From Glycera tridactyla (taxonomy: Eukaryota), in assembly GCA_965644265.1 (NCBI GenBank), contig OZ286459.1, forward strand, positions 18,352,001 to 18,416,000: a stretch of DNA of 64,000 bases. The letters run 5' to 3'. A program made the translations under genes and the position numbers. Below are positions 6,271-60,332 of this stretch, piece by piece (within the stretch, counting starts at the first letter, position 1; each line of letters starts with the position of its first letter). The notes under the pieces were generated by a model. That model saw only the letters and a program-made list of their open reading frames with translations, was not told the origin of the DNA and made no database searches.

Positions 6271-7019
6271 GAAGAATCGTATCTGCAAATTTTATGAACA
6301 CAACATATTTTACTTTTATATGCCATACATGAACTACTGGACAGGGTTTACAACACCCAATAACAATATACCCAGAGATTACAATAAACAGCCACATGAC
6401 TGGAATAACGATGACATGTATAGACAATGCAAGCAATGAATATATAGAGAGGATATAAAAAGATGATTGCATAAACGCACAAATCTCCATTCATCTCCTG
6501 AAAATATATGAGCACCAGTGAATGTGACAAATGCAGAAATTGATGATAAAACTCTGTCCAAACCTATCAGTATTTACTGTCGCAACAGGTGCACCAGAGT
6601 ATTTTTATGGTTCGAGTAAACAGCTATATCTTTTGGAACCTGTTTCATCACTCATATTACAGTGGCCTTTTTTCAGATTACAAAAACGCCACAAGTATAA
6701 AAAAAAGATGATGCCTGTACTGCAAAGCTTCACATAACGCGACCTTCACCAAAATGGGAGAAAGTGCAATGTTTCTTTGAAAAAAAAAATCAATTTATTT
6801 GTGTCAGGTCAGGTTTCCAGAAACTGTAAGAAACATCTAATAAAGCACACAGTCCAGAAACTGATTCTGTTGCGTGATGTAGGTGAAATGAGAATTCTGT
6901 GTTTCTTCATCTTTTGGCACACATATAAAATGTTTCTTACTGTCCATTCAACTTGTCTCTTAGGTTTAGTTTGATTGAGGTTCAAACAACTTGTATTAAC
7001 TGAGAGGATTGTGTAAGCT

Positions 7020-14092: not shown

Positions 14093-14575
14093 CTACTTGT
14101 TGAAACCACATGATGTCAACCAGAACTGTATGTAGGGGTGACGCTGGGCACGGCGTCTTTTTCTGGGCATTGCAAAATAAAGCTGTTCTGACTGCTCATA
14201 TGTTTTGATGCAATCCTCCGAGTGGTCCTCATCCTGGTACTCGGAAAGTTGAAGGAATTCGATGAGTGATGTTGGAATGGGGAACTGACGAATGGCACTG
14301 ATGATTGATGTTTGTTTACGCACGGAACGAAGATGATTGCGGATGGTGGTACGGGACAGATGCATGAGCGTTGCCGGGCTCGTCATCACGTCTTTGATGG
14401 ACAGGATCACTGCTTCTCCGTAGTCATGATTTCCGTTCTCTAAGAGTCCGTTCAGCAGCTGCTCGTCACTGCGCCGAAAACGGTAACCAGCAGCGAGAAA
14501 ACATGAGATGAGCTGCCGACCTTGTGCATCAATGCAACCTGTATTGTGCTTCAGCATGGAGAGCAAATCATGAAC
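14093..14575 (-). CDS. ASB-family gene, last coding exon (SOCS box)
   Basis: Acceptor ttttggttgtag|GTT, phase 0; encodes ...SPATLMHLSRTTIRNHLRSVRKQTSIISAIRQFPIPTSLIEFLQLSEY..., a SOCS box (BC-box plus Cul-box pattern); stop at 14093-14095. Confidence 0.88.
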   Translation of the reverse strand, partial: VHDLLSMLKHNTGCIDAQGRQLISCFLAAGYRFRRSDEQLLNGLLENGNHDYGEAVILSIKDVMTSPATLMHLSRTTIRNHLRSVRKQTSIISAIRQFPIPTSLIEFLQLSEYQDEDHSEDCIKTYEQSEQLYFAMPRKRRRAQRHPYIQFWLTSCGFNK

Positions 14576-15236
14576 CTACAACCAAAATCACCAGCAAATA
14601 ATTCAATTTCATTAATCCCCATTTTCTATTTATGTGAGACAAGGCATGAATTCCCAAAAGGTTCGCCCGCANNNNNNNNNNNNNNNNNNNNNNNNNNNNN
14701 NNNNNNNNNNNNNNNNNNNNNNNNNNNNNNNNNNNNNNNNNNNNNNNNNNNNNNNNNNNNNNNNNNNNNNNNNNNNNNNNNNNNNNNNNNNNNNNNNNNN
14801 NNGCTTTAGCACCCAAACAATTTTAAGCAATTTCAAGCCATTATTATCTCCTTCTATGGGCCGATTGTCCCTGTGATTTTGTCTCTATTGATCATCAAGG
14901 AATAAAGGGTGTTTCATTGTATTTAAAGACCCATTATATCTCCACTCACTAATCTGTCAGAAAATCTGAAGCTCTGTGTCTGCATGCATGCATACACCAT
15001 AGATGCCAACCTTTGAAAGACGAATAGTAGCACTGTCAATTTTAAGGAATAGAAGAGCCAGTATTTGCAATGGAATGATAGGGAAAATCCTGATTTTGCA
15101 CAGTAGTATCAACCATAAAATGCAATAATTTTGGCAAAAAAGTAGTTGCTACTCCAAAATTGTCATGCTTGGCATCTCCGATACACACACACATACGTTC
15201 TATACACAAAAACAGCCAGTATTATGTGTACTCTAC

Positions 15237-15387
15237 CTGATATTTATTGGGGTTGAATCCATGCCTGAGTAAAAGGATGGCAATGGACAGCCAGCAGTAC
15301 TGGACTGCCAGCATAAGCAGAGTGAAAGGACCATGTCGACCATACAACTTCATCCGATAATCAGTTTCATGCTTTCCGCGAATTTTT
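15237..15387 (-). CDS. ASB-family gene, coding exon 4
   Basis: Acceptor ttttctttttcag|A (phase 2); KIRGKHETDYRMKLYGRHGPFTLLMLAVQYCWLSIAILLLRHGFNPNKYQ (ankyrin-like LLLRHGFNPN); donor CAG|GTAGAG, phase 0. Confidence 0.85.
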
Positions 15388-16007
15388 CTGAAAAAGAAAA
15401 GAAAAATGTGAAAAATATGCATGCATGAATGATATACTACATGTTATGTATGTAGAAGCATGTATACTGGCTCCAATTGATAAGAGTTGAGCAAAAGCCA
15501 TGTATGTGAGGTGAAGTGTTGCTGGTTCAGGGAGCAATACCAATGACTCATATGCAGCCAACCAGATTTATATTTCTTTTTCTTTGAGATAAGGATGTCC
15601 CCGCATTGGCGCTATAAAAATATTTCCTGTAGCAAGTTACTCCTGTCTGGAACTCAATATTGGGCGAGAAATCAAAGTTGTGGCAAACTGAATTCATCTC
15701 ATAATGCTTTTGGCTGAAGGATGAATAATTAGGCTAATACAAAGAAGAGGCCACTTTAGCCAGATTTTTCATGACTGAATGAGCGATATGAGAGGATCTA
15801 GTCCCTGTTTTGATTTCCTCCACTTTGATTTCTTTTAGCCAGTTTGGCTAAAGACATGATAATTCCTAAAACTAGACGTGAGAAGCATTAGCCACTGGCT
15901 ATCAGCTAGCCCCTACATAGTGTTCATTCTTTTAATGGGAGGACACAGATCTAGTAAAGCTCACACATCACAGACAGATTTTAATTCCGAGAGAGTGAGT
16001 GCATTAC

Positions 16008-16143
16008 CTCATGTTTCCCCAACTACGAACATTGAGCCTACAACCAGCTTCAAGCAGCATGTTGGTGATGGCGATATCGCCGTGATAGATGGCGATGACT
16101 AGTGGTGATTCTTGAAATAAGTCCAACTTATTCACATCACAAC
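16008..16143 (-). CDS. ASB-family gene, coding exon 3 (not in the ORF track)
   Basis: Acceptor gattacag|GT (phase 1); GCDVNKLDLFQESPLVIAIYHGDIAITNMLLEAGCRLNVRSWGNM(R) is a clear ankyrin repeat; donor AG|GTAATG, phase 2. Confidence 0.88.
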
Positions 16144-16394
16144 CTGTAATCAACATCATTCAATGAAATGGAGATCAAGGTAGTAAAACCAACAATCAAT
16201 ATCAATCAAATAAATGGAGATCAAGACAAGTGCACCAGTCATGTTGGCCTCGATTTAACAATGCAGTGGTTCTTTTCTAAGGTACCAGTTCAATGTTGTA
16301 CACTGAATTGGAACATGAGTAATTATTACCTTGACAAACATATGCTCCTTGTCAGATATTGTGAGTGCTGAACTGTTTGCCTTATCTGCATATA

Positions 16395-16569
16395 CAGTAG
16401 AACCTGTCTATAAAGACCACCTTCGGTCGCATCAAAACGCGGTCTTTATGGGCAGGTGGTCTTTATAGAGGTCATTCACTGTTGAAAATATTACCACGGT
16501 CGCAGCTCAGGTTGTCTTTATAGAGAGGTGGTCTTCATAGAGAGGTGGTCTTTAGAGCAGGTTCGACTT
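16395..16569. mobile_element. MITE, CAGT-type subfamily 2, in ASB intron
   Basis: ta|cagtagaacctgtctataaagacc ... ggtctttagagcaggttcgactt|ta. Confidence 0.75.
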
Positions 16570-17246
16570 TATAATAATAATCAAAATAATAATAATATTA
16601 ATCATTAATTTCACTTTTAGAGTACATGTACATACTTGCAGTGATGAATATTGTGAGAATTGATTGTGGGAACTGATCAAGATATGTGACTGGTGGTGAC
16701 AGCCCCCGGAGAGCTGCTAAAAACCTTGAAATCCATCCAGATGTCTGAATGGTGAGAAGCCACTGAAAAGTATATGATTCTCCACCAGGTTATCGACTGA
16801 AAATTGCTTTTGCAGATGATGAATTAATGAGGTGATGTTGGAAAATATAGTTGAGTTCTGATGATGCACATGCTATTTTCTTCAATGTCATGGTAATATG
16901 GATAATGAAGTGAACTGAGAGACTGAATGGAATTGTCTTTGCCCCCATCAAGCAGCAACTTTCAGTCGATCATTTGCAGATGAAGAATGTAATCTTTTGT
17001 GTGCCAACCATCCAAGAATAGCAAAAGTCTACTGCTTACTCCAAAATGAGTTTGCACCCATCAAATCATTTCCACAAACAAAAATATGACTTTTCACTCA
17101 TGGACCTCCCTGGAGAAACCCCAAAGAAATCACTTATTATTTCATTTATGTGGGACTGCTGGAATTTGGAAATTCTGTTTGAAAACTTCAGAAAAACATA
17201 TCTCAGTGAGATTACATCCCCACAAACATTTTTTTTGTTCCAATAC

Positions 17247-17386
17247 CTTCTTCAATGAGCAGCTGTATGACATCTTGGCGTCCATGCCAGACTGCGATGT
17301 GAAGTGGTGCCATATCATGATATGCTCCAGCATTGATATCTGCACCAAAATCCAACAGTTCCTGGATGAGCTCCATGTCGCATTTC
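17247..17386 (-). CDS. ASB-family gene, coding exon 2
   Basis: Acceptor tttttctgtatgttcag|G (phase 2); KCDMELIQELLDFGADINAGAYHDMAPLHIAVWHGRQDVIQLLIEE is an ankyrin repeat; donor G|GTATTG, phase 1. Confidence 0.9.
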
Positions 17387-17646
17387 CTGAACATACAGAA
17401 AAAATGCTTCATTGGTGATCCCTCATTAACAACAGGAACACTGTATTGAGAGGTAGACCAAACAAAGCGTCACATCCTTGTGGATTCATCCACAGTTAAA
17501 AGGGTTAATTCAACCAGGAGAGTTCTGATATGTGAAGTTAGGTTAACTGATCAGATCTACATAATTTCAACATTTCAAAAATAGTATGGTAATTTGAGTT
17601 CATCAAGTGTTTGCTCACTGGACTGCTGCGGAAAGATTACTATTTA

Positions 17647-17822
17647 CAGTAAAACCTGTACTAAGTGAAAAGTCACGGGACCAAATTTTCCCTCCACTTA
17701 AGACAGGATTTTGCTTAGCGCAGGACAATTATAGTGAGAAAAAACATCCGGGCAGACCGTGGGGTATGTGCTTACGACAGGATTTTGTCTAGCAAAGGTT
17801 TACACTCGAGCAGGTTTTACTG
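17647..17822. mobile_element. MITE, CAGT-type subfamily 3, in ASB intron
   Basis: ta|cagtaaaacctgtactaagtg ... cactcgagcaggttttactg|ta. Confidence 0.75.
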
Positions 17823-18056
17823 TATTGGAAACATACGCCTCATATGGTGGCACTGCTTTCAACTATTAGCAGAATTTGATTTTAAACTAACAATTTGTCT
17901 CAGCCTAAGGGGGATTGATCTCTCTGGGTGAGCTGTCAATGTCACATTTGTTCGTGAGCATAGTACTGATAGCAATTGAGCTCAGACTTTCTTGTAATTT
18001 GCAGATCAATGATATGCTATACTGAAGTCACTGATACTCGAAACTTAATCACTGAC

Positions 18057-18316
18057 CTGCAGGCTTCATGAAGTGCCATCCACATGAACGCATCTCCGTC
18101 ATGATTATGAATGTAGCAGACTGTATTTGGGTCACCAACACCTCGGAGAAGCACACTCACAACACCCAAATCATTTCTCTTCACAGCAATAAGCATGGGC
18201 GTGAGTCCTTGCTCCAGGTCATTGACGCCACTTTGCCGCAAACGCAGCAGTCGCTGGACCTGGCGGGCATCACCGGCCCGTGCTGCCTCATGTAACGAGC
18301 TTGGTCCGACCCCCAT
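18057..18316 (-). CDS. ASB-family gene, probable first coding exon
   Basis: tccATGG start; MGVGPSSLHEAARAGDARQVQRLL...GLTPMLIAVKRNDLGVVSVLLRGVGDPN...WMALHEAC(R) carries ankyrin repeats; donor AG|GTCAGT, phase 2. The five exons total 1170 nt = 389 aa plus stop. The start codon is uncertain because the frame is open upstream to an acceptor at 18411. Confidence 0.85.
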
Positions 18317-18559
18317 GGAATCATGCTCTATGTGAAACTTGGAAGGGAGGGCTTCATCCCAAATATATGTAGCGAAGATATGCCACAAAGGACATCTTAT
18401 GCTGGTCCATTCTTGGAGGTATAAGGTAAAATGCAGCAGACAGAATTCTTGAAGATGCACACTCAAAACGGACTGTCCATAGCTGATTTTCTTAAGATGG
18501 TGAACATCTGAATAAAATATATATCGATTCAATCATACATATTAACCATACTGAATAAC

Positions 18560-18945
18560 GGTATCAGGACAGGTCCTAACCAAGACCGCTTATACCCTGC
18601 ATATCGCCGGGACCACTCATAACCACGGCAGGACCAACTTTGACTGATAACTTAGAAATTGTCCGAATTTCTGATGATAGATATCTCACGAATCTATACC
18701 TAAAAACTATATTTATTGATCAGTGAGGTATCGTCAAATTTGATTGTTGGAATCAGTATAGAAGCAAACTTATTCAACAATTTGAGATCTGAGCACGGGG
18801 ATCGGGAGACTGCAAGGTGTCAATTAGCCTGCCCGGGAACACTCAATCGCCGTGCAGGTACCTCTGGTACGGGTACGGGGTACAAACGGTCTCACATCCA
18901 GGGTACGAGCGGTCTCGGCTACGACCTGTCCGACATTCCTGAATA
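18560..18945. repeat. Diverged monomer of the 378-bp satellite
   Basis: Contains ggagactgcaaggtgtcaat.agcct and gggtacgagcggtctc.g.tacga.ctgtccgacattc, as in the 22562-23931 units. Confidence 0.7.
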
Positions 18946-19244
18946 ACCATGAGCACTGTGAAACTCCACTGATCCACATATTCATTTGAGCGGACTGACA
19001 TTTCAGAGAGGGCGAGTGGGCAAAAATGCCAAGGTGGTCCGAGGAAGATGGACGTTTCTGGAAAATGATGGCCATTTTACGAAAAATGAATCATACAACA
19101 GTTGCATCCAAATATTGGGCAGGTGAGTTTCCCGTGTTTTTTTGAGGTGAAAAAAGCAACCACTGTGTGACTCAGTGAATCAAAGTAATGAATATTTTGA
19201 ATTTGAATTTGTGAATTTTTCACGCCCTGATTGCAAGTATTTAT

Positions 19245-20041
19245 CAGGTTGGGGCCTGGCCTGTTATTCCAGTACGTACTGGAATCACAGGGCGTACTGG
19301 AATCACAGGATGGTGGGTGTACTGTAATCACAGGGCGTACTGGGATTTCAGTACACCCTGCAGTGATGAGTGAGTTTTGAGTAAATAACCAAGTGTGTTC
19401 AGATTTTTCCTTACTGTTCTCTGGAACTGTGATTTTCATTGCCTGTAAAGTACTGTCATGAAAATACTGTACTTTCTGATTCAGGAAATAACAATATTGT
19501 AGCAATTGTGTGAGTTTGAGCAGAATTGTATACCATTGAAAATAGGCAGATGTGTGTTATTCATGATCTCTGATGTCAAAATCAGCTTGCCATTGGAAAA
19601 CCGCTCGGTGGATTTTTCTCAACTTGCACTCAAATTGAAGAGTGAACTTCTGCCTCCAAAATAAACATGAATTTACAGTGAGCTCATCATAAAAAAATTT
19701 GTCAGGATACAAAAATCTGTCAAGGTTTTATGATTTTTCATCTTTGCCTCCAACTCCCAACTGCATATTTCAGCTCCAAATTACCCGATTTTGATAAAAG
19801 TGGGCTCTTCTTAATCAGTAAATAATCAGTTTTCAAGCCAATATCTGTCAGCAAGTGGGATTTTGGAATAAATAGTGATTTTGAGGGAAAGTGTGGACCT
19901 ATTCATGGTTGACTGATAGCCTAAGCTCAGTGTCCTGGGATCCCAGGACGTACTGTAATCACAGTACACCTGGTGTACTGTGATTTCAGTACGCCCTGTG
20001 ATTCCAGTACGTACTGGGATAACAGGCCAGGCCCTAACCTG
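19245..20041. mobile_element. Non-autonomous TIR element with CAGG termini and 5-bp TSD (hAT5-like, inferred)
   Basis: ~65-bp TIRs caggttggggcctggcctgttattccagtacgtactggaatcacagggcg / its reverse complement ending aacctg; flanks tttat|...|tttat; subterminal cgtactg(g)aatcacag repeats. Confidence 0.75.
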
Positions 20042-22561: not shown

Positions 22562-23931
22562 ATTACCAATAAGTAGTTCTAACGATCTGTGAAATTTAGG
22601 CGATTTTCGTTGCTCCTAACATTGTTTAAATGAAGATTTTCAACACATCGGAGCTTCGAGTGAGGGAGTTAGGAGACCGCAAGGTGTCAATCAGCCTCCC
22701 TGTGAACCCATGATCGCCGAGGGTACAAGTGCTTCCACGTACGGGGTATGACCTGTCTGGCTTCCCGGGTACGAGCGGTCTCAGTTACGAGCTGTCCGAC
22801 ATTCACTCAGGACAACTCGTAACCAAGATCGCTCATACCCCGCATAACGCCAGGACGAGTCGTAACCGCGGCGGTTTCCGGAAAACTGTTGGAGATTCTT
22901 GGATGATAATTCCAGGGATTATCACCAGTGATTACCAATAAGTATTTCTAATGATCTGTGATATTTAGGCGATTTTCGTTGCTCCTAACATTGTTTAAAT
23001 GAAGATTTTCAACACATTGGAGCTTCGATTACAGGAGTTAGGAGACTGCAAGGTGGCAATCAGCCTCCCCGTGAACCGTGATCGCCGAGGGTACAAGTGC
23101 TTCCACGTATGTGGTATGACCTGTCTCGCTTCCTGGGTACGAGCGGTCTCAGTTACGAGCTGTCCGACATTCACAGCAGCGGGATCGGGACAACTCGTAA
23201 CCGAGACCGCTTGTACCCTGCATAACGCCGGGACAAGTTGTAACCGTGGCGGTTTCCGGAAAACTGTTGGAGATTCTTGGATGATAATTCCAGGGATTAT
23301 CACCAGTGATTACCAATAAGTATTTCTAATGATCTGTGATATTTAGGCGATTTTCGTTGCTCCTAACATTGTTTAAATGAAGATTTTCAACACATTGGAG
23401 CTTCGATTACGGGAGTTAGGAGACTGCAAGGTGGCAATCAGCCTCCCCGTGAACCGTGATCGCCGAGGGTACAAGTGCTTCCACGTATGTGGTATGACCT
23501 GTCTCGCTTCCTGGGTACGAGCGGTCTCAGTTACGAGCTGTCCGACATTCACAGCAGCGGGATCGGGACAACTCGTAACCGAGACCGCTTGTACCCTGCA
23601 TAACGCCGGGACAAGTTGTAACCGTGGCGGTTTCCGGAAAACTGTTAGTGATTCTTGGATGATAATTCTAGGGATTATTATCAGTGATTACCAATAAGTA
23701 GTTCTAACGATCTGTGAAATTTAGGCGATTTTCGTTGCTCCTAACATTGTCTAAATGAAGCTTTTCAACACATCGCAGCTTCGAGTACAGGAGTTAGGAG
23801 ACCGCAAGGTGTCAATCAGCCTCCCTGTGAACCCGTGATCGCCGAGGGTACAAGTGCTTCCACGTACAGGGTATGACCTGTCTGGCTTCCCGGGTACGAG
23901 CGGTCTCAGTTACGAACTGTCCGATATTCAC
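22562..23931. repeat. Tandem satellite, ~3.6 units of ~378 bp
   Basis: ttaccaataagta.ttctaa.gatctgtga recurs at ~22562, 22931, 23309 and 23687; near-identical 106-aa ORFs are offset by exactly 378 bp. Confidence 0.93.
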
Positions 23932-25575
23932 TATACGAAGTACATTTTTTAGCTGGAACTGGTGTCCTGTAAATTTGAATTTGACACCAAGTGCACATAG
24001 CCAGAGGCAGATACCTCAAGAGCAAACTAATTATGATATCAGTGACCCACTATCTTTTTCCGCACCTCCATCCCCCTCATCCCTGCCATACTGCTCCCTC
24101 AGAATTCCCCATATCATTCTCTAGTAATCCAAATTGGTAAAGTTTGGGAATGTATTTTAACACTTTGGCACCAATTTGATCTGGTAATAAAATACTCTTG
24201 CAACTTGAATAGTCTTTTGAACCAGGTGCCCAGGGTGTGGCCTTTGATACCCACAACAACATGTGCAAACCAAGCGGAAAGAACGACCTACATGCCTGCA
24301 ACGGATTTATGATTAGCCGCAGCATCTGCAAACCGGAGAGGGGAATAGAGTGCACCCTTAAGTGGAATGTGTATATATCATGTCAACGTTTACATACGAA
24401 TGAGCAATGCCACGGAACTCTTTTATTTCATTCTAATTCATTTTACTTTAGGACAAATTCTATGCAATGAAGGAACAATGAAATTTTGGCCTGACAATGA
24501 TTTTACTCGAATCAAAGAGGTGGGTCGGCGTAAACTGGCGGACGTCCATACAAGACAAGACTGATGCCAAGAATGCACTGGCATCTATTCATAGGCTATT
24601 GAATCAGATCTAGTAGTTGGTGGAACTACAATACGCCAACAAAATCGTCAAACTGTGCACGGAGGTGGCAAGTTAGATGCAGTCACTTCGATTCTCATCT
24701 GAGCAACACTGTGACCATCAGACACATGGACAAGATTCACCATTCCATACTGGATCTGCACCATTACATATATCTGTATAATCTGCGCTATTCTTGATGT
24801 ATTCTTGATATATCCACTCCTGTATGTTCTGCTCATTACATTAATCCAGTCACGGAAGTATCTATACTTTTCCCCTAATATAGGATTGTCGTGAGAAATA
24901 ATCTCTGCCGCGCCTAAACTGATGAAATAATCAGCAACCCAACTGTTAGTGTAGGATAATTTGTAATTTCGTGTATTTTTGGTAAGAGTAAAAACTCACT
25001 TGATTTTGAAAGAGGGTGTCATAAGGAATAAGACATTAGTGTGGCATTTTTTCTTGACTTTCTGAGGGTAAGGAATCCAAGACGGCGTCCGAAATGGCTT
25101 GAGCACACACAAATGCGACATCTTTGCAAGTAATGTGTATATGATATAGTTACAGATAGAATATCCAAATGTATCTTTTGAGACACAGACACCAATGGAA
25201 TCATGACATCTAAGTTAGTACTATGATGATCTACATACTCGAGCCCAAATGGCGTCAAATATGGCCACCGCACACGCCAATATCTGCAGTCTACTAGTAT
25301 GCCTTTATAAACATTATTAATTATAAAACTGCATTTTGTTGGCATAGTTATAACCAAGTATCATTTAAAGATATATATTTATCACAAATAATTCCTAATT
25401 ACCAGGTAAAAATATATCCAGATACGATGGGATAATTGAAATACTGTTCAATCTCATTCCAACACAAAGATGCAGAAAAACATACTGGTTAAGTATATGT
25501 CTATCAAGTAGTAGTCTAGGGACATCAATTGAATCAATATTAATGGATGTTACAGACAATAATATCTTGAACCTC

Positions 25576-26040
25576 CTAGTCCCCCTTCATCCCTGATTGG
25601 ATAATTTTGTTGTTGCAACTGCAAACTCGGCATCCACAAAGTTCTGAACACGGCATAGTGTTCTTGCGACAGCTGCACTTTCTTTTACATCCACATTTGA
25701 AGGCGCCCTTTATGAGGTGCAGCACTGCTTCTAGAGATGTTGGATTCAAACAGTGAAGGGATAAGTAGTCACCCGGGCCTGTATCAAATGTCCAACCAAA
25801 TGCAGCTGATCCTGGGAGATATTGATGATTTCCACCGATTTCCTCCCAATCATTGCTATACAGTGTGCCTGACAAATGTGCAGGACCAGTGAACCAGATG
25901 TTGGTGGGGGATTTCCCCATCAGCCGCAAAATTTGATTAGAGAAACTTCTGTTTGGACTTCGGACTGATACAATATACAGATGAAGCGTACCAAATGAGA
26001 GCATGTATGAGTAGGCAGAAACATTGTCATCCTCAAGCAT
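25576..26040 (-). pseudogene. C-terminal remnant of an Academ-type transposase protein (Cys8 / tesmin-like CXC finger)
   Basis: LP..AAFGW...L.LIK...CGCKRKCSCRKNTMPCSELCGC..CSCNN plus, in an adjacent frame, PPPTSGSLVLHICQAHCIAMIGRKS (cf. LPPT..AL..H..RA.YQA.IW). Superfamily assignment is from memory of the motif. Confidence 0.6.
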
Positions 26041-26793
26041 TGTGCGCGCCTGGGGATCACCTAATCACATTCAAAGCACAACTCTTTTTTGTTTTGTCCG
26101 AATTTCCTACATATAAACTCAACACAAAGGCTCCTGGTCTCAGTACAAAGAAAACACAACTCAATCCAATTTTTTTTATATTTCATGTCGTGGGAATTTT
26201 TACAAAATAAATGCCCTATGAGTATCGGTCGATGACTAACGACAACAAACTTCATAATGTGGATACTCATGGGCATTTCCCTAGCAGACAAATTCTCAAA
26301 ATCGACAAGGAAGTCAACTGAATTTCCAAAAATTAAATTTTTTTTAAAAATCCAGGAAATTCCCAAATTATGTCAAAATTGAGATTGAATAAAATAAACG
26401 GAATAAGCGTGGCACATCAATACTAGATGACACTAGATGTGTCTAATAAATGTTTTGTGAGCATATTGAACAATTTATTAAGTTCAATGCAATCAGGAAA
26501 ACGTTGGACAACTAGACGTTGTTATGTTAATATGAATTATTCCAAAAATATTTGGTGGAAGCAACAAGATTTTGCAATTAGTCATTGCTGAAATCTCTGG
26601 ATATGGACTTTAGACAAGTCAGAATTTCTATAACAAACAAAGGTCAAGGTCACATGATTCAAGGTCAAGGTCACACATTTTATCAAATTTATTTAATTTT
26701 TACAAAATTGTTGAACAGCATACAATCCGAATGAGCCTTTCAGTCCCCACCATCATAGAAACCTGAAAGGCCCACCCATAACACATAGGATAA

Positions 26794-27756
26794 TTATTGA
26801 GGATTCAGAATCCAACAATCCGGACGAATATAGCCTAGGAATGCATCCGATTTCCATCTTCCACGTTTTTGTATATCAGATACAGAGCAACCCTGTTTAG
26901 CCCAGTCGGTACACCTTCCTATACGGAAACCGTGAGCTGAATAAGTGACACGATTTGTAGGCCAGTTCAATAATTTCACTAGTTTCTTGATCAAACTATT
27001 GACCGTTTCATACGATATTGGGCGTCCCTCAGAAATGAACAAAGGACCAGATCCTCGTCCCCGGACCTTTAGATATCTTAACATGTATTTGACTGGGCAA
27101 ATGACTGGACTTGCTTCAGATTTCACCAACAGTGAACATGGTGCCTCAGAAAATTTGAATGATCTGAACGTAACTTTGAAAGCAATGAAACCTTCTTTAT
27201 CCTTACACCATTGCAAATCGTTTAGCTGTAAGAAATGTTGAACTTTACCATTGAAAGCGTATTCCGATATTCTCAATGCCAGAGCATAGGCCCATACGAA
27301 CATGGTTTGAAATAGACATTTCTGATGATAAGACCAATCCATTTCTCTAATCGCTTCAATGAGTTGAATAACTTTGCGCTCATCAATTGCAGCCTTAGAA
27401 TCTGGAGTTTTTGTCACTTTGATAACGCTTGAAATTAGTCTTTTGATTAGGTTAGAATTACATATTTCACTTTTCCCTTCAAGAACGAGAAAGAAAGCTA
27501 TTGCTGATAAACGAGAACTAATCGTACTATGTTTATAACCTTTAAGATATAAATGTGTTACAAAATAACCAACTGATTCAGATGATAAGTCTAATAAGTT
27601 AGAAGTACGAAACTTACTAAATTCACTCCAAGCCCTGCAGTATATGGCACGTGTAGACGGGGCTAATCCTTGTAATAGCAACCACCTCATTACTACAGGA
27701 AATTGGCCGGATCCAGTGCGATCGGCATGGTCATTGGGTTGATCGTCAACCCCCAC
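26794..27756 (-). CDS. Tyrosine recombinase of the retroelement (likely ATG at 27690)
   Basis: Catalytic R (ALRISEY), HxxR (SAHGFRIG), W (GRWKS) and Y (FLGYIRP); N-terminal LAPSTR..Y...W..F..F SAM-like core-binding region typical of DIRS YRs; frame open. Confidence 0.93.
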   Translation of the reverse strand: MGVDDQPNDHADRTGSGQFPVVMRWLLLQGLAPSTRAIYCRAWSEFSKFRTSNLLDLSSESVGYFVTHLYLKGYKHSTISSRLSAIAFFLVLEGKSEICNSNLIKRLISSVIKVTKTPDSKAAIDERKVIQLIEAIREMDWSYHQKCLFQTMFVWAYALALRISEYAFNGKVQHFLQLNDLQWCKDKEGFIAFKVTFRSFKFSEAPCSLLVKSEASPVICPVKYMLRYLKVRGRGSGPLFISEGRPISYETVNSLIKKLVKLLNWPTNRVTYSAHGFRIGRCTDWAKQGCSVSDIQKRGRWKSDAFLGYIRPDCWILNPQ

Positions 27757-29378
27757 GATTTCAACTGTTCCTGTGAAACATAATGTCTAGATAAGAAATC
27801 TGCAACAACATTGTCAACACCTGAAATATGAAATGATTTTATACATATATTGTTCAACATGACAAACAAAGCAATCTCTCTCATAATCTTAGCAATGCAC
27901 GGGTCTTTAGATGATCTTTTGTTGAGGACTTCCACAACTGCCATGTTATCGACATAGAAATGTACTAGTGCATTCTTAAGAATGGGGCGGCAAATCTTCA
28001 AAGCTACAAGAATCGGATATATTTCAAGGACAGCTATGTTTCTATTACTCCATGTTTCATTGTAGTCGAAATATACCCAGAACTGACCGCAAACCACGGC
28101 CGCTCCTCTTTTGCATGCGTCTGTGTATATATCAATTGGCTTAGACTGCCCGATGGTCCTTTCATTCAGAAAAGCTATACCATTATACTGTTGGAGAAAT
28201 TTTACCCACATAATCAAATCTTCTTTTAGATTGACAGTGAAATTGATCAGAAAAGCAGGATTTACCAAACCTCTAGTTGTGTCAATCAAACCTCTCAAAA
28301 ATGATCGTCCTACTGGAATCAAAGTTGAAGCCCACATCAATCTGCCAATCAAAGTACGCATCTCTGACAAAGAACATTTTTGTTTTTGCAAAACTTGTTG
28401 TACTTGAGTGAGATATTTCTCCATTTTTTCCTTAGGTAATCGAGCCTGCATATTTACTACGTCAATTTCAACCCCCAGAAAAGACAAAAGCTGTGTCGAT
28501 GTTACAGTCTTTTTGGGACATAACGGTACGCCTATGTCTAAACACATGTTTTGAAATTTCTTCAAATAAATGTCACATTTTTCTTTTGATTCTGCTGTAA
28601 AACAGAAGTCGTCAATCATATGAGCAACGTTAGGTATTTGTAATTTGTTTACACAAATCCAATCTAAAGCAGACGAAAATCTTTCAAAGATTCGACACGA
28701 TGATCTTGCACCCATTGCCAAACATGAACTAACGTAAAACTTTCCTTCGAATCTTAACCCCATGAGATGATATTGTTCCGGTTTAACTGGCACTATACGA
28801 AAGGCTGACTTTATATCTGCCTTTGCCATATATGCTTTTGGACCTAAGGCTATTACGAAATCTAAAACTTTCTGAGCCGAAACATAAGAAACCGTAGCCT
28901 CATAGTCTGGGATGAACCAATTTATAGAATTATCATTGTATGGAGCTGATAAATTGTGAATCATACGAAACACCCCCGGATCTTTTTTAGGTATTACAGC
29001 AATTGGAGATGTTTGAATGTTATCGTATGGAGCTTCATCAAAGGGCCCTATCCTACGACCCAACGCTACTTCGTCTTGAATCAGTTTATTCGTTGCCAAA
29101 GGGAATTGACGAACTGAATCAGAATTCTTCGCTCTGTATCCAGGCGATACTCCTTTGAACCCGATATCAAACCCATGAGTGAATCCATTGACAATATATA
29201 GTTTCTCATTATATTCATAACCATCCAACCAAAAATTAAGCCTCCCCGGCCTTACCGGTGAGTGAACCCTTAGAAGCCTGGGGTCCTTTGTTATTGACTT
29301 GGTTGGAATTTCTGGAACACAAGAAAAGAGGATGACGCCCATTACATGAAGGACACATATGCTTATAACCACAATCAT
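27693..29378 (-). CDS. Reverse transcriptase plus RNase H of the retroelement
   Basis: DIRS-type N-terminus (SPV...L..Y...GF..GFDIG); SPIAVIPKK..FRMIHNLS, AKADIKSAFR, LAMGARSS, HMIDDF, FLGVEID; RNase H residues in YTDAC, LEIYP, VDNMAV and DNVVADFLSR; frame open over 561 codons. Confidence 0.95.
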   Translation of the reverse strand: MIVVISICVLHVMGVILFSCVPEIPTKSITKDPRLLRVHSPVRPGRLNFWLDGYEYNEKLYIVNGFTHGFDIGFKGVSPGYRAKNSDSVRQFPLATNKLIQDEVALGRRIGPFDEAPYDNIQTSPIAVIPKKDPGVFRMIHNLSAPYNDNSINWFIPDYEATVSYVSAQKVLDFVIALGPKAYMAKADIKSAFRIVPVKPEQYHLMGLRFEGKFYVSSCLAMGARSSCRIFERFSSALDWICVNKLQIPNVAHMIDDFCFTAESKEKCDIYLKKFQNMCLDIGVPLCPKKTVTSTQLLSFLGVEIDVVNMQARLPKEKMEKYLTQVQQVLQKQKCSLSEMRTLIGRLMWASTLIPVGRSFLRGLIDTTRGLVNPAFLINFTVNLKEDLIMWVKFLQQYNGIAFLNERTIGQSKPIDIYTDACKRGAAVVCGQFWVYFDYNETWSNRNIAVLEIYPILVALKICRPILKNALVHFYVDNMAVVEVLNKRSSKDPCIAKIMREIALFVMLNNICIKSFHISGVDNVVADFLSRHYVSQEQLKSWGLTINPMTMPIALDPANFL

Positions 29379-30468
29379 TTACCATACAACGTTTGCCAGG
29401 GGTTTGAAAAGCAAAACAAAATCCTCTTGGCGTGCCTTGTTGATTATTATTTGACTTATTGTTGTTGTTGTTGTTGTTGTTGTTGCCAGCATTGGACCCC
29501 GACGGCCCGTTAGGGTACATTCCTGATCTTGTTGCCCTGTTATGAAATTGGACATGCAGAGTGTTCCAGGGGTAAGGATGCTCCATAAATGATCTTTCTA
29601 GTCGAAATTGCTCGTCATAATATTTATAGTCGCCACCTTTTGCTGCTATTTCTTTTATCTCTGAGCTGTAAGTGTAGAGATCAATAATTTCTGATTTGAT
29701 GAGTTCTAAAGGTTTGAAAGGATGCATCGTATATACTGAAGCAAATGTCGTAAAAGCCTTATCCCACTCAGTGATGCTATTAATAAACCTCTTCCTTTTT
29801 TCCGGAACAAATTTTCCTGATTTTCCATCTACTATGTAATTATTGGGCATGATCTTTTCTGGAAAATTTAATTCTGCCAAATTGATAAATTGGTCCAGCC
29901 AAATCTTTACTTTGAGTTCCATATTAACTTTGTAACCAGCTGGAAGGCCTGCAGCTAGTACACACCGCAAGCTTTGTGTTCCTGATACAGACATCGGATT
30001 TCCCACAACTCTATGTTGCATAATATTAACGTCTGGCATAGCTGGATGAAATTGATTGTTTATGAGAGGTGGCTGAGGGGGAGGGTTACCCGCGCTATAT
30101 TGAGAAATAAAAGCTTGTGAAATGTCACCACCAGTTGCATTTCTATTAGCGTTGACTGCTGACATCAAAGTTTGTTGAAAGTCCGGGTATGCCACATGCA
30201 TATTCAAGAAAGATTGATTGGTTGTTCTTGAATTGAAGAAAGATTGATCTTGGTTCTGTTGTGCCGAATTATGAACATTTGAGTTGGATACATTAGAATT
30301 GCGCGTAGCATTGTTATTATTTGAATTGTTCCTACCTGTAGGTGCTTGAGGAGGAGCCTGAGATCGTTTGTTAGTATCCATAAAGTCGACCATGGTCTTT
30401 TTCATATCCGTTATAGCAGTAGACATGGTCTTCATCGTATCCATCATCTGACTCATGACTGTGTTCAA
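29236..30468 (-). CDS. gag, C-terminal part
   Basis: KIWLDQFINLAEL...ITEWDKAFTTFASVY...YDEQFR and terminal Cys/His finger CFAFQ...C....C.YKHMCPSCNGRHPLFLC, typical of DIRS/Ngaro gag; this frame is open upstream to ~30615. Confidence 0.85.
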   Translation of the reverse strand: MNTVMSQMMDTMKTMSTAITDMKKTMVDFMDTNKRSQAPPQAPTGRNNSNNNNATRNSNVSNSNVHNSAQQNQDQSFFNSRTTNQSFLNMHVAYPDFQQTLMSAVNANRNATGGDISQAFISQYSAGNPPPQPPLINNQFHPAMPDVNIMQHRVVGNPMSVSGTQSLRCVLAAGLPAGYKVNMELKVKIWLDQFINLAELNFPEKIMPNNYIVDGKSGKFVPEKRKRFINSITEWDKAFTTFASVYTMHPFKPLELIKSEIIDLYTYSSEIKEIAAKGGDYKYYDEQFRLERSFMEHPYPWNTLHVQFHNRATRSGMYPNGPSGSNAGNNNNNNNNNKSNNNQQGTPRGFCFAFQTPGKRCMVNDCGYKHMCPSCNGRHPLFLCSRNSNQVNNKGPQASKGSLTGKAGEA

Positions 30469-31109
30469 CGCTGGAGAAACTGAATTCCCCGCTTTGTTAG
30501 CAAACGATCCTTGATTATTGGCTCCCGCCTGTGCCGCTGATGCTGCCGCTGTTGATACTGTTGCAGAGGGCTTGGAGCATATGTATCTGGTAAACTCATA
30601 GGAAATGGAACATTGTCATTTGATATTGACACATTTGTTGCTATTGGATTGAATAATGGCTGGCCAATCGAATGGGACAAAGACTGTCTGGCAGATAAAG
30701 CATTAGCTGCATGTTTTTCGAGTTTCGCTAAATTTGACGGTAGACCCGTTTGAAGTAATTGATCTTCGGATAATTGTGAAAAAGGCAAAGTAACAATTGG
30801 TTGAGGCATCTGTGCACAAGGTATTTCATCTTGAGATTGAAATGTCTGAGAAACATCAAAGGAAGACCTGCTAGACGCCGGCCTATAAGCTACTTGCGTC
30901 GCAGGACATGAGCTCTGAGAAGGTGTTAAAATGTTATTATAGTTCCACGTGTCCAAAGAGCTGGATAAGAATTGAGTAGCACTAGGTATGTTGTCAAACA
31001 AATCATGAGATCGATTCATGTTATCATCTTGAATTCCTTCATTTTTCGAAAACTTCCTACTCGTAGGATCCTGAACATCAGGATCCGAAGATTTCCTTTT
31101 CGGAGGCAT
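30465..31109 (-). CDS. Probable gag N-terminal part, frameshifted relative to the C-terminal part
   Basis: atcATG start with MPPKRK; low-complexity S/Q/P-rich sequence; one extra base near 30568-30570 would fuse it to the downstream gag frame (624 aa in total). Confidence 0.6.
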   Translation of the reverse strand: MPPKRKSSDPDVQDPTSRKFSKNEGIQDDNMNRSHDLFDNIPSATQFLSSSLDTWNYNNILTPSQSSCPATQVAYRPASSRSSFDVSQTFQSQDEIPCAQMPQPIVTLPFSQLSEDQLLQTGLPSNLAKLEKHAANALSARQSLSHSIGQPLFNPIATNVSISNDNVPFPMSLPDTYAPSPLQQYQQRQHQRHRREPIIKDRLLTKRGIQFLQR

Positions 31110-31219
31110 GATGACTTTGCTAATATAACAGACAATGATTTGTTAAATATCAATGAACATAATGAAAGTGCACCACCCCCTACTCATATCCCACCACGTG
31201 GCTGCGCATCGTCACTCCG

Positions 31220-32026
31220 CTAATTATAATAGCCACGTGGTGAAATTGAGCAATTTTGGCGAGGAGCTAAACCATGTTGTAAACGATATTCGTCAACGCA
31301 TATTTGCCCTAGGTTTGGTAATAAAGCAATCAAAGCTGCTCTCATCTCATAAAGAAACTTGTAGAAGAATCTGGAGCCCGGAATAGGATGGATACCATCA
31401 TGAGACCAATCACTAACTCGAAGCCTCATACCTTGAGAATTGTATCTGAAACCCTTGATTCTGAAAAATACTGACGAATATGAATCTCCACATAATGATT
31501 GCATCTTGCAATTAAATAATGCTGCTCTGTAAGCAAAATCTTTTGGCCCCACTGACCTGTTCAAGACCGATAAGAAACCTACTGTTTTGACCCCATGCTC
31601 CCTTCGGAAAATTGTTCCTAAATCGAAGAGATATTGTGCAACGTCAGTTGGATTATTACCAGTTCTTGTAAGATCGTTAGAACCCATGTTAAACAAAACC
31701 ACATGTGGAGCGAGAGCTGCTAAAGCTAACATCTTGTCCTCAATGTCTTTGTTATCAACATACTTGAGGAGAAAGTTACATGATCTGAATACAACCTCAC
31801 AATATCTGTTATCTAAATGCATAAGTTCTGCCATAACATTGCCTTCCTTTCTCGTAGCATTATCCACCAAAGGTTGATAACCTTGTTCAATGATTTGCAA
31901 TTTTAAATGGTCCCTGACCCTCCTTGTGAAAGAATGTCCCAAGACCACCACCTTTGGCTTACTTCCCAAGCAAGTGGGTATAGGTACAAAGGGAAGTTTA
32001 GGCGTTGACCTATGACCACGTTGCAT
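31220..32026 (-). CDS. SGNH/GDSL-family hydrolase (esterase-like) ORF of the retroelement
   Basis: Block I VVVLGHSF (Ser nucleophile), block III NMGSNDL and block V HDGIHP (DxxH); intact 268-aa frame. Confidence 0.88.
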   Translation of the reverse strand: MQRGHRSTPKLPFVPIPTCLGSKPKVVVLGHSFTRRVRDHLKLQIIEQGYQPLVDNATRKEGNVMAELMHLDNRYCEVVFRSCNFLLKYVDNKDIEDKMLALAALAPHVVLFNMGSNDLTRTGNNPTDVAQYLFDLGTIFRREHGVKTVGFLSVLNRSVGPKDFAYRAALFNCKMQSLCGDSYSSVFFRIKGFRYNSQGMRLRVSDWSHDGIHPIPGSRFFYKFLYEMRAALIALLPNLGQICVDEYRLQHGLAPRQNCSISPRGYYN

Positions 32027-32113
32027 AATGAAATGAAAGCTTATGCTAACTGATGCAAGTTACTTACTCTCGTAGCGGAGCGACGAATGCGAACGATCTC
32101 TGAAATCGGCTTG

Positions 32114-32137
32114 CTTATATAGGAACTGGTTACGTAA
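32114..32137 (-). promoter_or_regulatory. Putative promoter of the retroelement
   Basis: Minus strand reads ...ttacgtaaccagttccTATATAAGcaagcc...; palindromic TTACGTAA (bZIP-type site) just upstream of the TATA box; the first ATG downstream is the SGNH start at 32026. Confidence 0.55.
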
Positions 32138-32606
32138 TGTAATGTACGCAGGAAACATTCTGCAAATAAAATTCAAAGAGTCAACATCCGAATCATTTTC
32201 ATGGGTAATCATTATCATATGAGCAGCCTGTAATAAATTAAAAATTGATTGTGAAAATTCCTAAGTTACAAAATTCATCAACGAGGCCTTCCGACAATAA
32301 TTTAGTTCCACCTATTGCCACTAGAGATCGGAAGGCCTGTGTCCTTCAATCCTTCACAAAAAATAAAATTGATAGCTCAATTTTCGATTGGTACCGCCAG
32401 CATATCCACCAGACATACCAATATCTGTCAAAGCATGGAACCCAACAGTGGAAAAGTATGTTCTGATCCCATGTTGTCGTATATGCCAGAAACAGTGATG
32501 ATACTATTCATCCTGTCCTTTCACGTTAAATGTTCACGCAATTAGATACCTGCCTAAAGTGCTGGCAATGATCAACCTTTATTCTGTTACTAATAGTATG
32601 TTTGAA

Positions 32607-33298
32607 CGCCTCTCATATTCTGTGATATGATGACCGACCAGATTGCCACCTGCAGTGAAACTTGTCTTAAGAAGCACCTCTCATATTCTGTGATACGGTG
32701 ACCGACCAAATTGCCACCTGCAGTAAAACTTGTCTTAAGAAGCACCTCTCATATTCTGTGATACGATGACCGACCAGATTGCCACCTGCAGTAAAACTTG
32801 TCTTAAGAAGCACATCTCATATTCTGTGATACGATGACCGACCAGATTGCCACCTGCAGTGAAACTTGTCTTAATAAGCACCTCTCATATTCTGTGATAC
32901 GATGACCGACCAGATTGCCACCTGCAGTAAAACTTGTCCCAAGAAGCACATCTCATATTCTGTGATATGATGACTGACCAGATTGCCACCTGCAGTGAAA
33001 CTTGTCTTAATAAGCACCTCTCATATTCTGTGATACGATGACTGACCAGATTGCCACCTGCAGTAAAACTTGTCTTAAGAAGCACCTCTCATATTCTGTG
33101 ATACGATGACTGACCAGATTGCCACCTGCAGTAAAACTTGTCCTAAAAAGCACATCTCATATTCTGTGATACGATGACTGACCAGATTGCCACATGCAGT
33201 AAAACTTGTCCTAAGACGATGTTTGAACGAAGCACCCCTCATATTCTGTGATACGATGACTGACCTGATTGCCACCTGCAGTAGAACTTGTCCTAAGA
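32607..33298. repeat. Minisatellite, 10 units of 68 bp
   Basis: cacctctcatattctgtgatacgatgaccgaccagattgccacctgcagtaaaacttgtcttaagaag at 32607, 32675, 32743 ... 33151, and at 33233 after a 14-bp insertion. Confidence 0.95.
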
Positions 33299-33456
33299 CA
33301 GACTTGTCCATAGCAAAAACTTGCCCTAAGCAACAGGTTTATGTTCATCATGCCAGAATATTTGTCACTATAGTTGATCTGTCCTAAGCCTGGACTTGCC
33401 CCAGGCACACTGATTTTTCTCTTACCCTGGCGTTATGCTCAGGACAAGTTTGACTG
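33279..33456. mobile_element. CAGT-type MITE continuing from the last minisatellite unit
   Basis: cagtagaacttgtcctaag ... ctcaggacaagtttgactg|ta form TIRs. Confidence 0.7.
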
Positions 33457-34158
33457 TAATGTAACTGTCACTTGAAGTATGCTGTTGGAGCTGTCAAGAG
33501 AGTGGGAGTGGTCTAAGATGGGGAGGGGGGAGGGGTCTCACATACCTCGCTAGAAGCCCAATAGAGTTGATGAAGCTATAGGAAGCCCCGAAAGCAGTGA
33601 CATTTATACACTAGGCCTATATCGGACCCTACCCGCATCTGATTATGAACACATACATAGGTGCTGGTATAATAGGGTAATTACTATGAACAGATACTGG
33701 TAGCTAAAGTCAAACTGGTAGTTAAGTTCAATCGTGCTGCCAGCTGGGTACGGTACGTTTTTCGCCCTAGCATCGCGAATTCATATAAGATTGAACTGAC
33801 ACTCACATACAGACATCTCCGAAAACTCCAACGACTGAAGATGTGATCACGGCGAAACCTTCCTGTTTATTTCACCTTAGAATGCCAAATACGTCACTTT
33901 TACGCTACTCAAGTAATTAATGCAGTTTGGGCTGTTCATCAAAATGGTTTCCCTCCTTCCCTCTCTCTATCCTCTCCCCTCTCTTTCCATCCTCTCACCC
34001 TCCCCCCTCTCTCTTTCGCTTACAATACAGCATTGTAGCATCTTGTTGATTTATAGTCTTGGTCACTCGAGAGTCACACACAATTACCCAGTTGGGGGAC
34101 GTGCGAGAGATCCGGTGATGTAGCACGAAGCCTGCAGCAAAAGCCCCCTCTGTTGCGA

Positions 34159-60172: not shown

Positions 60173-60179
60173 TAGTCTT

Positions 60180-60332
60180 CCGGTGGTGGCGGTGATGTTG
60201 GTGACGACGGTGATAGTGGACAAGTAGTAGTAGTAGTAGTAGTAGTATTGGTAGTTGTAGTGGTTGTTGCTGTTGCTATTGTTCTTGTCGTTAATTGTTG
60301 TTGTTGTTGTTATTGTTGTTCCTGTTGTTGTT
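60180..60332. repeat. Compound (GGT/GTA/GTT)n microsatellite
   Basis: Runs of gtagtagta and gttgttgtt. Confidence 0.85.

What the first reader, a model, noticed from the sequence alone, without database searches (positions are those of the whole stretch)
26680..32345. YR retrotransposon with a leading SGNH hydrolase gene and no visible split direct repeats or ITRs
Seen: intact SGNH, RT/RNaseH and YR frames in the order promoter-SGNH-gag-RT/RH-YR-polyA, with no MTase domain. Known: DIRS1-like elements have ITRs and an internal complementary region; PAT and Ngaro elements have split direct repeats; some Ngaro elements carry an SGNH hydrolase ORF, which as I recall lies 3' of YR. Here the hydrolase is first, and comparing both flanks by eye found no long direct or inverted repeat. 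Inference: this could be a structurally distinct YR-retroelement lineage that replicates without classical repeats, or a young copy whose ends were lost.
Basis: partly seen in the sequence, partly recalled or inferred. Interest (0 to 1): 0.82.

Follow-up and report, generated by a model that had tools for sequence, protein, structure and literature searches.

The report
Ngaro retrotransposon copy missing its end-repeats
This is one copy of a young jumping-gene family of a known type (Ngaro) whose sister copies do carry the classical repeated ends. This copy lacks the last repeat block, and the esterase gene placed first is a real but modest family-wide variant.

Summary
The ORFs are real and lie on the minus strand in the order SGNH esterase, gag, RT/RNaseH, tyrosine recombinase (YR), with no methyltransferase. 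The element is longer than reported: window 26086-32389.

At least 21 full-length siblings (94-99% identical) define a 322-bp A repeat and a 663-bp B repeat. Ten siblings have the canonical split direct repeats A1-internal-B1-A2-(31-nt spacer)-B2. The window copy and ten others stop at B1.

On a tree of the copies, the A-int-B and full forms are interspersed and equally young. The short form therefore arises again and again. The window copy also has a one-base frameshift in gag.

The esterase-first order is genuine:
- Five independent relatives share it, including a hemichordate element; one of them has the same repeats and a spacer.
- The esterase is under purifying selection as strong as RT and YR (dN/dS 0.03-0.09).
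- The one held paper that gives a position puts the Ngaro hydrolase after YR.

Contigs from four runs that are probably RNA show GT-AG splices in the family's transcripts. One joins gag in frame to RT/RNaseH.

This scan already noted the same layout elsewhere in this genome (s1-320738, s1-302896, s1-302889).

The parts
32068..32389 (-). A repeat (322 bp), present here only as A1. It holds a TATA box at 32114-32121 and a 3' splice acceptor (AG at 32161-32160, first exon base 32159).
   Evidence: All 21 siblings start at the same base. A occurs once in the window. The acceptor is used in X1 and X4 contigs and its AG is kept in 21/21 copies.
32062..32067 (-). GTAAGT 5' splice donor placed exactly at the A/internal boundary.
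   Evidence: Sequence. GT is kept in 21/21 copies. One X3 contig joins the A end to about 30593, and that junction is absent from the genome.
31220..32026 (-). SGNH/GDSL esterase ORF, 268 aa, the first ORF of the element.
   Evidence: PF13472 E 1.7e-5, below the Pfam cut-off, while 4 of 6 aligned members (the window protein and five homologues) match PF13472 at E<=0.01, best 6.9e-12. The profile hits PAF-AH Ib (E 5e-6) and the ORF1p esterase 4c1b. The AF2 model (pLDDT 80.6) matches PAF-AH 1wab by Foldseek (E 4.7e-6, prob 1.00). The GHS, GSND and DGIH blocks are present. dN/dS is 0.03-0.09.
30465..31109 (-). 5' part of gag (214 aa), cut off by a one-base frameshift near 30581.
   Evidence: Siblings have a single 624-649 aa gag ORF. 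The window copy lacks one base at element position about 1809.
29236..30468 (-). 3' part of gag (406 aa from the first Met), including the conserved core and a Cys/His-rich C-terminus.
   Evidence: Aligns with gag of relatives L031, L034, L037 and L035.
27693..29378 (-). RT/RNaseH ORF, 561 aa, with no methyltransferase domain.
   Evidence: RVT_1 and RT_RNaseH. Intact in 21/21 copies. Best outside relatives are no more than 51% identical.
26794..27756 (-). Tyrosine recombinase ORF (298 aa from the ATG at 27690).
   Evidence: PF00589 plus SAM-like N-domain. Full-length (298 aa) in 19/21 copies. dN/dS is 0.03-0.09.
26086..26748 (-). B repeat (663 bp), present here only as B1 and ending ...ACAAAAA. 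ATTAAA lies at 26692-26697 and AATAAA at 26474-26479.
   Evidence: All siblings end at the same base. B occurs once in the window.
29312..30335 (-). Intron seen in an X1 contig (GT..AG). Removing it joins gag codon about 258 in frame to the RT/RH ORF at ...EIPTK.
   Evidence: The junction is absent from the genome. The dinucleotides are kept in 21/21 copies.
27771..29255 (-). Second intron seen in the same contig (GT..AG). It is an in-frame removal of nearly all of RT/RH.
27612..27617 (-). GTAAGT donor inside the 5' part of YR. It is spliced to the acceptor in A, and the exon then continues as A end + spacer + B, which is possible only in copies that have A2.
   Evidence: Contigs of X1 and X4. 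The junction is absent from the genome.

Best explanation
The stretch is one copy of a young, recently active Ngaro-type tyrosine-recombinase retrotransposon family with roughly 30 full-length copies in a 2.04-Gb animal genome.

The full family structure is A1(322 bp)-[SGNH esterase, gag, RT/RNaseH, YR]-B1(663 bp)-A2-31-nt C-rich spacer-B2. These are classical split direct repeats.

The window copy is the shorter form A-internal-B. It lacks A2-spacer-B2 and has a frameshifted gag. Under the established split-repeat model it cannot rebuild its own ends, so it is a dead-end copy.

How it works:
- Inferred: transcription starts at the TATA promoter near the 3' end of A1.
- Supported by sequenced contigs: the RNA runs through B1 and A2 into B2.
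- Inferred from the model, and supported by near-identity of repeats within a copy: the internal B1|A2 junction lets reverse transcription restore the ends that the RNA lacks.
- Inferred: the recombinase inserts the closed form at its B|A junction. Observed: there is no target duplication, and insertions favour A-(A/T)-A | T-(G/A) sites.

The esterase-first gene order is a conserved trait of a wider clade, and the esterase is kept by selection. Its role is unknown. By analogy with the esterase of CR1/L2-type non-LTR ORF1 proteins, a lipid- or membrane-linked step is the best guess.

The A-int-B form arises repeatedly. I slightly favour that it is made during replication, by closing the terminally redundant cDNA through its repeats into a one-unit circle, over later deletion between B1 and B2.
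For: - At least 21 siblings share identical ends; 10 have A2-spacer-B2 (one of them has two such units) and 11 do not.
- Genome-wide counts at up to 2 mismatches: 26 A|internal junctions, 19 spacers, 15 B|A junctions.
- A1/A2 differ by 0-4 nt and B1/B2 by 0-5 nt within a copy, while copies differ from one another by 1-10%.
- The two forms are interspersed on the tree: 7 changes against a shuffled mean of 7.3. Terminal branch lengths do not differ (Mann-Whitney p 0.8).
- No target duplication; target bases are biased.
- ORFs and domains. RT is intact in 21/21 copies, YR in 19/21, SGNH in 18/21. dN/dS is 0.03-0.13 for all four genes.
- SGNH fold and catalytic blocks.
- The same gene order occurs in L031, L032, L033/L034, L035 (Glandiceps talaboti), L037, L041 and L042.
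- L037 also has A1...B1-A2-41-nt C-rich spacer-B2 at 100% repeat identity.
- Contigs contain a whole A next to the spacer and B, and show GT-AG joints on the sense strand that are absent from the genome.
Against: - No phylogeny with named Ngaro, DIRS1, PAT or VIPER references could be built.
- The runs are only guessed to be RNA and come from one study. They are assembled contigs, so starts, ends and isoform linkage are not shown.
- The promoter, the RNA ends, the circular intermediate and the esterase activity are all inferred.
- Relatives L032, L035 and L041 show no split repeats in the copy examined.
Confidence: 0.88

Rival explanations
1. The A-int-B form of the window copy arose after insertion. 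Unequal recombination or replication slippage between the two 663-bp B repeats, which start about 1 kb apart, removed A2, the spacer and one B.
For: - B1 and B2 are long, close together and nearly identical.
- The forms are scattered on the tree, as expected for independent losses.
- One copy (L020) has an expanded array with three AB units, the reciprocal kind of product.
- Up to four candidate solo A-spacer-B loci exist: spacers with no nearby B|A junction.
Against: - There is no age effect. A-int-B copies are as young as full copies (terminal branches 0.0006-0.007 against 0-0.006, p 0.8).
- Three of the six youngest copies are already A-int-B.
- About half of all copies would each have needed an independent deletion within a very short time.
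Confidence: 0.4
2. The basic unit is A-int-B. The A-int-B-A-spacer-B copies are head-to-tail pairs of a full element and a separate 1-kb non-autonomous A-spacer-B element, inserted by the recombinase at the resident element's end.
For: - The B|A joint between the units is exactly the joint expected for a circle.
I did not check it.
- Arrays with three units exist.
Against: - In five different subfamilies A2/B2 match their own A1/B1 to within 0-5 nt, and the spacer variant follows the subfamily, although the B repeat differs between subfamilies by up to 10%.
- The same A1...B1-A2-spacer-B2 layout with 100% identical repeats occurs in a relative with only 38% RT identity.
- A spliced contig crosses from YR into A2-spacer-B, so the two units are transcribed as one.
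Confidence: 0.07
3. One reading: a structurally distinct YR retroelement lineage that replicates without terminal or split repeats.
For: About half of the copies, including very young ones, have no A2-B2.
Against: - Sibling copies have canonical split direct repeats that are renewed at each cycle.
- A-int-B copies never form a supported clade of their own.
- The distant relative L037 has the same repeats.
Confidence: 0.03

Closest known systems
Ngaro-like YR retrotransposons with a hydrolase ORF (for example Xenopus tropicalis DIRS-53_XT; PMC9210276)
   Same: gag, RT/RNaseH and YR with no methyltransferase. Split direct repeats A1...B1-A2-B2. An extra SGNH hydrolase ORF of unknown role.
   Different: - In the described amphibian elements the hydrolase ORF follows YR and the ORFs overlap. 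Here it is the first ORF, upstream of gag.
- The repeats are longer here (322 and 663 bp against 236 and 152 bp).
- A 31-nt C-rich spacer separates A2 from B2.
- About half of the copies lack A2-B2. The same paper found no split repeats in the sister family DIRS-54_XT, so copies or consensus sequences without these repeats are already on record.
Esterase domain of ORF1p of CR1/L2-type non-LTR retrotransposons (PDB 4c1b) and PAF acetylhydrolase Ib catalytic subunits (1wab, 1bwr)
   Same: SGNH fold with a Ser / Asn / Asp-His catalytic set. In the non-LTR elements the esterase also sits in the first ORF (the position is from my own knowledge, not tested here).
   Different: Sequence identity is only 12-17%. 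Here the esterase is a free-standing ORF in a YR element. The match to 4c1b is weak (E 0.018).
DIRS1-like and PAT-like elements
   Same: YR-based retrotransposition without target duplication. PAT also has split direct repeats.
   Different: No inverted terminal repeats, no internal complementary region and no methyltransferase domain.
Solo-LTR and tandem-LTR derivatives of LTR retrotransposons
   Same: Direct repeats renewed at each cycle give rise to deleted and expanded derivatives.
   Different: Here the loss removes only the terminal redundancy and keeps all the genes. It may happen during replication rather than afterwards.

Membership tests
Ngaro (YR retrotransposons) | Encodes a tyrosine recombinase instead of a DDE integrase. 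| tested here: met
   PF00589 E 6.2e-8 plus SAM-like N-domain. The motifs LRISE, HGFRIGR and LGY are visible in the translation.
Ngaro (YR retrotransposons) | RT/RNaseH without a methyltransferase domain, with gene order gag-RT/RH-YR. | tested here: met
   The only hits are RVT_1 and RT_RNaseH. The ORF ends about 60 aa after RNaseH.
Ngaro (YR retrotransposons) | Split direct repeats A1...B1-A2-B2 (tested at family level). | tested here: met
   10 of 21 siblings have them, with repeats differing by 0-5 nt within a copy. The relative L037 has them too.
Ngaro (YR retrotransposons) | Split direct repeats in this particular copy. | tested here: not met
   A and B each occur once in the window, and no N gap lies next to the element.
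Ngaro (YR retrotransposons) | Insertion without target-site duplication. | tested here: met
   20 copies were examined. The longest match between the two flanks is 0-2 nt in 19 of them and 4 nt in one.
Ngaro (YR retrotransposons) | RT and YR group with named Ngaro references rather than DIRS1, PAT or VIPER. | not testable with these tools
   No named reference sequences were available. The nearest database proteins are unnamed or labelled 'uncharacterized'.
Hydrolase-bearing Ngaro as described (DIRS-53_XT type) | SGNH ORF located after YR. | tested here: not met
   SGNH is the first ORF here and in 7 related loci from 5 independent sources. The described position is taken from PMC9210276.
DIRS1-like | Inverted terminal repeats plus an internal complementary region, and a methyltransferase domain. 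| tested here: not met
   No inverted repeat longer than 28 nt at 75% complementarity. No methyltransferase hit.
SGNH/GDSL hydrolases | Conserved blocks with the catalytic Ser (block I), Asn (block III) and Asp-x-x-His (block V), and the SGNH fold. | tested here: met
   GHS (S32), GSND (N117) and DGIH (H213) are present. The profile matches PAF-AH at E 5e-6. The AF2 model matches by Foldseek with prob 1.00. The single-sequence Pfam score of 25.8 is below the cut-off of 32.9.

The most novel reading that the evidence does not exclude
Ngaro elements of this esterase-first clade may use the host spliceosome as part of their expression and replication plan.
- The A/internal boundary is a splice donor.
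- One in-frame splice fuses the gag N-terminus to RT/RNaseH, replacing a frameshift as the way to make RT.
- An acceptor inside the A repeat can work only in the downstream A2 copy.
- Replication routinely yields two kinds of progeny: competent A-int-B-A-B copies and dead-end A-int-B copies made from one-unit circles.
Probability: 0.3. Interest if true: 0.6.

Novelty: new variant of a known kind. Interest (0 to 1): 0.4.

Why it matters
This result removes a false lead: the family does not replicate without repeats.

It also gives a clean, young family in which the split-repeat replication model for Ngaro elements can be tested. About thirty copies exist, with nearly all genes intact and both full and short forms present.

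It shows that an esterase placed in front of gag is a selected, clade-wide feature. That layout parallels the esterase in the first ORF of some non-LTR elements and points to a shared, still unknown need for this enzyme in retrotransposition.

The spliced contigs, if confirmed, would be first evidence on how such elements express four genes from one transcript.

Tried and rejected
- Word-based homologue search with the esterase alone found nothing. The profile search found only 8 unnamed proteins.
- The 31-nt spacer is absent from the window at up to 3 mismatches, so it is not a spliced remnant of the internal part.
- I tested whether the spacer pairs with the stretch just before B1. The duplex energy is no better than for shuffled spacers (fraction at or below the observed value 0.48-0.74), so the idea was dropped.
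- The primary Ngaro papers (Goodwin & Poulter 2004; Poulter & Butler 2015) are not held. Whether an esterase-first Ngaro is already described there or in Repbase or Dfam therefore stays open.
- The Saccostrea locus L036 is too decayed to show gene order.
- More distant relatives L038-L040 (RT 30-34% identical) have gag-RT(-YR) with no detectable esterase on either side.
- The host species was not identified. The window holds ankyrin and SOCS-box exons, so it is an animal.
Full report
**Observation**

The window holds five minus-strand ORFs between 26.8 and 32.0 kb. Pfam assigns them as follows:
- 32026..31220: GDSL/SGNH hydrolase (PF13472, E 1.7e-5, below the curated cut-off).
- 29378..27693: RT plus RNaseH.
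- 27756..26794: phage-integrase-type tyrosine recombinase with its SAM-like N-domain.

The two ORFs in between (31109..30465 and 30468..29236) have no Pfam match. The second aligns with the gag ORFs of related elements. No methyltransferase domain was detected.

**True extent and repeats**

A search of the window's own genome (2.04 Gb, 207 contigs) with 26000-33500 found at least 21 full-length siblings at 94-99% identity.

In ten siblings the full copy is followed at once by a second copy of its first 322 bp (A), then a 31-nt spacer, then a second copy of its last 663 bp (B). One sibling (L020) has two such extra A-spacer-B units. This is the canonical Ngaro/PAT arrangement A1-internal-B1-A2-B2, as described in PMC9210276 and PMC6681497.

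The window copy and ten others end at B1. In the window, A and B each occur once, the spacer is absent, and no N run lies next to the element.

Pattern counts over the whole genome, at up to 2 mismatches, give 26 A|internal junctions, 19 spacers and 15 B|A junctions, with no hits for the reversed control patterns. The family therefore has roughly 30 full-length copies, and half or somewhat more of them are in the short form.

**Repeats are renewed at each cycle**

Within a copy, A1/A2 differ by 0-4 nt and B1/B2 by 0-5 nt. Three copies show no mismatch at all. Between copies, B differs by up to 10%. The spacer variant (A or G at one position) follows the subfamily. This is what the split-repeat replication model predicts. 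It argues against A-spacer-B being a separate small element that happens to sit next to full copies.

**How the short form arises**

A maximum-likelihood tree of the 5.3-kb internal part interleaves the two forms. It needs 7 changes of label, against a shuffled mean of 7.3, and starred branches force at least 6. Terminal branches are equally short for both forms: means 0.0034 and 0.0032, Mann-Whitney p 0.8. No supported clade consists of short copies only.

The short form is therefore produced again and again and does not propagate as such. Two routes fit:
- Deletion between B1 and B2 after insertion.
- Formation during replication. The expected RNA is terminally redundant (tail of A1 ... A2, and B1 ... 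head of B2). Closing the cDNA through the A repeats would give a one-unit circle A-internal-B.

The lack of any age effect and the presence of very young short copies make me lean slightly to the second route. This is not shown.

**Ends and target**

All copies begin (A/T)A-TCGAAAATTG and end ...ACAAAAA. At the internal B1|A2 joint the two repeats overlap by AA. No target duplication is present.

The base before the element is A in 17 of 20 copies. The first base after it is T in 12 of 20, and the second is G or A in 19 of 20. This fits recombinase crossover at a short stretch shared by the B|A joint and the target. That reading is an inference.

**State of the window copy**

In most siblings gag is one ORF of 624-649 aa. 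The window copy has a one-base frameshift near 30581 that splits it. With A2-spacer-B2 also missing, this copy is best seen as a defective, dead-end member.

Across the 21 copies, RT/RH is intact in 21, YR in 19 and SGNH in 18.

**The esterase**

Between subfamilies, dN/dS is 0.03-0.09 for SGNH, 0.10-0.13 for gag, 0.06-0.12 for RT/RH and 0.03-0.09 for YR. The esterase is therefore as constrained as the core enzymes.

An alignment with five homologues from related elements shows the GHS, GSND and D-x-x-H blocks. Its profile matches PAF acetylhydrolase Ib subunits (E 5e-6) and, weakly, the ORF1p esterase of a non-LTR element (4c1b, E 0.018). An AlphaFold model (pLDDT 80.6) matches PAF-AH and many GDSL esterases with Foldseek probability 1.00.

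**Gene order in relatives**

The RT ORF has relatives at no more than 51% identity. Loci around them show esterase, gag, RT/RH and YR in that same order in:
- L031.
- L032, L041 and L042 (one sample).
- L033/L034.
- L037.
- L035, from the hemichordate Glandiceps talaboti.

L037 (38% RT identity) also has A1...B1-A2-41-nt C-rich spacer-B2 with 100% identical repeats. More distant relatives (30-34% identity; L038-L040) show no esterase.

The only held paper that states a position places the Ngaro hydrolase after YR, in amphibians (PMC9210276). No held paper describes it in front of gag. The primary Ngaro papers, Repbase and Dfam were out of reach.

Earlier notes of this scan reported the same layout elsewhere in this genome. 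I treat them as leads only.

**Transcripts**

Four runs from one study hold parts of the family. Their kind is only guessed to be RNA, and they are kept as contigs.

Laid on 26390-32389, one X1 contig of 2594 nt does the following:
- It runs unspliced from 32041 to 30336.
- It skips 30335..29312 and 29255..27771, both GT..AG on the element's sense strand.
- It joins 27618 (followed by GTAAGT) to 32159, which is preceded by a pyrimidine tract and CAG inside A.
- It continues as A end, spacer and B.

The last joint also appears in X4. A contig in X3 joins the A end (donor GTAAGT at the A/internal boundary) to about 30593, which is preceded by AG.

None of the three tested exon-exon junctions exists in the genome at up to 3 mismatches. 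All eight splice dinucleotides are kept in 21/21 copies.

Reading the sequence:
- The first splice joins gag codon about 258 in frame to the RT/RH ORF at ...EIPTK. This suggests that RT could be made as a gag-N/RT fusion from a spliced RNA.
- The splice into A followed by the spacer is possible only in copies that have A2. It shows that transcripts read through B1 into A2-spacer-B2, as the replication model needs.

These are assembled contigs from one study. They show that the joints exist. They do not show their abundance, the linkage between them, or where transcripts start and end.

**Verdict**

This is a Ngaro-type element by every structural feature that could be tested. Phylogenetic placement against named references was not possible.

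The alternative, a copy without its terminal block, holds. The esterase-first order is a real, conserved and selected variant, apparently undescribed in the literature I could read.

Interest is moderate. It rests on three things: the gene-order variant, the two recurrent copy forms, and the first sequence evidence for splicing in such an element.

Noticed in passing
window 32473-33288: Tandem array of a 68-bp unit (about 12 units) starting 84 bp upstream of the element's 5' end. Siblings have unrelated flanks, so it is not part of the element.
   Followed up: partly
window 23000-24000: Three tandem units of a 378-bp repeat, 91-100% identical.
   Followed up: no
window 14093-19505, minus strand: ORFs with a SOCS box (14093-14566) and ankyrin repeats (18017-18532). 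They look like exons of an ASB-type host gene, which shows the genome is an animal's.
   Followed up: partly
window 59102-60223, minus strand: Another reverse-transcriptase fragment (RVT_1, E 1.7e-17) from a different retroelement.
   Followed up: no
L020 (G000:C32:47372650-47381923): A sibling with three A/B units: A-int-B-A-spacer-B-A-spacer-B. This is an expanded array of the terminal block.
   Followed up: partly
L037:10353-10393: In a relative with only 38% RT identity, A2 and B2 are separated by a 41-nt C-rich spacer that resembles the 31-nt C-rich spacer of the window's family in composition. Its role is unknown. Pairing with the stretch before B1 was tested in the window's family and is no better than chance.
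   Followed up: partly
L033:1-86 and 6829-6914: The two ends of this metagenome contig repeat each other. It represents a circular or tandem 6.8-kb unit of a related esterase-first element.
   Followed up: no
window 30456-30510 (X1 contig): A low-depth contig replaces 53 nt here with 9 other letters. Some family members apparently carry a small replacement at the point where the window's gag frames meet.
   Followed up: no
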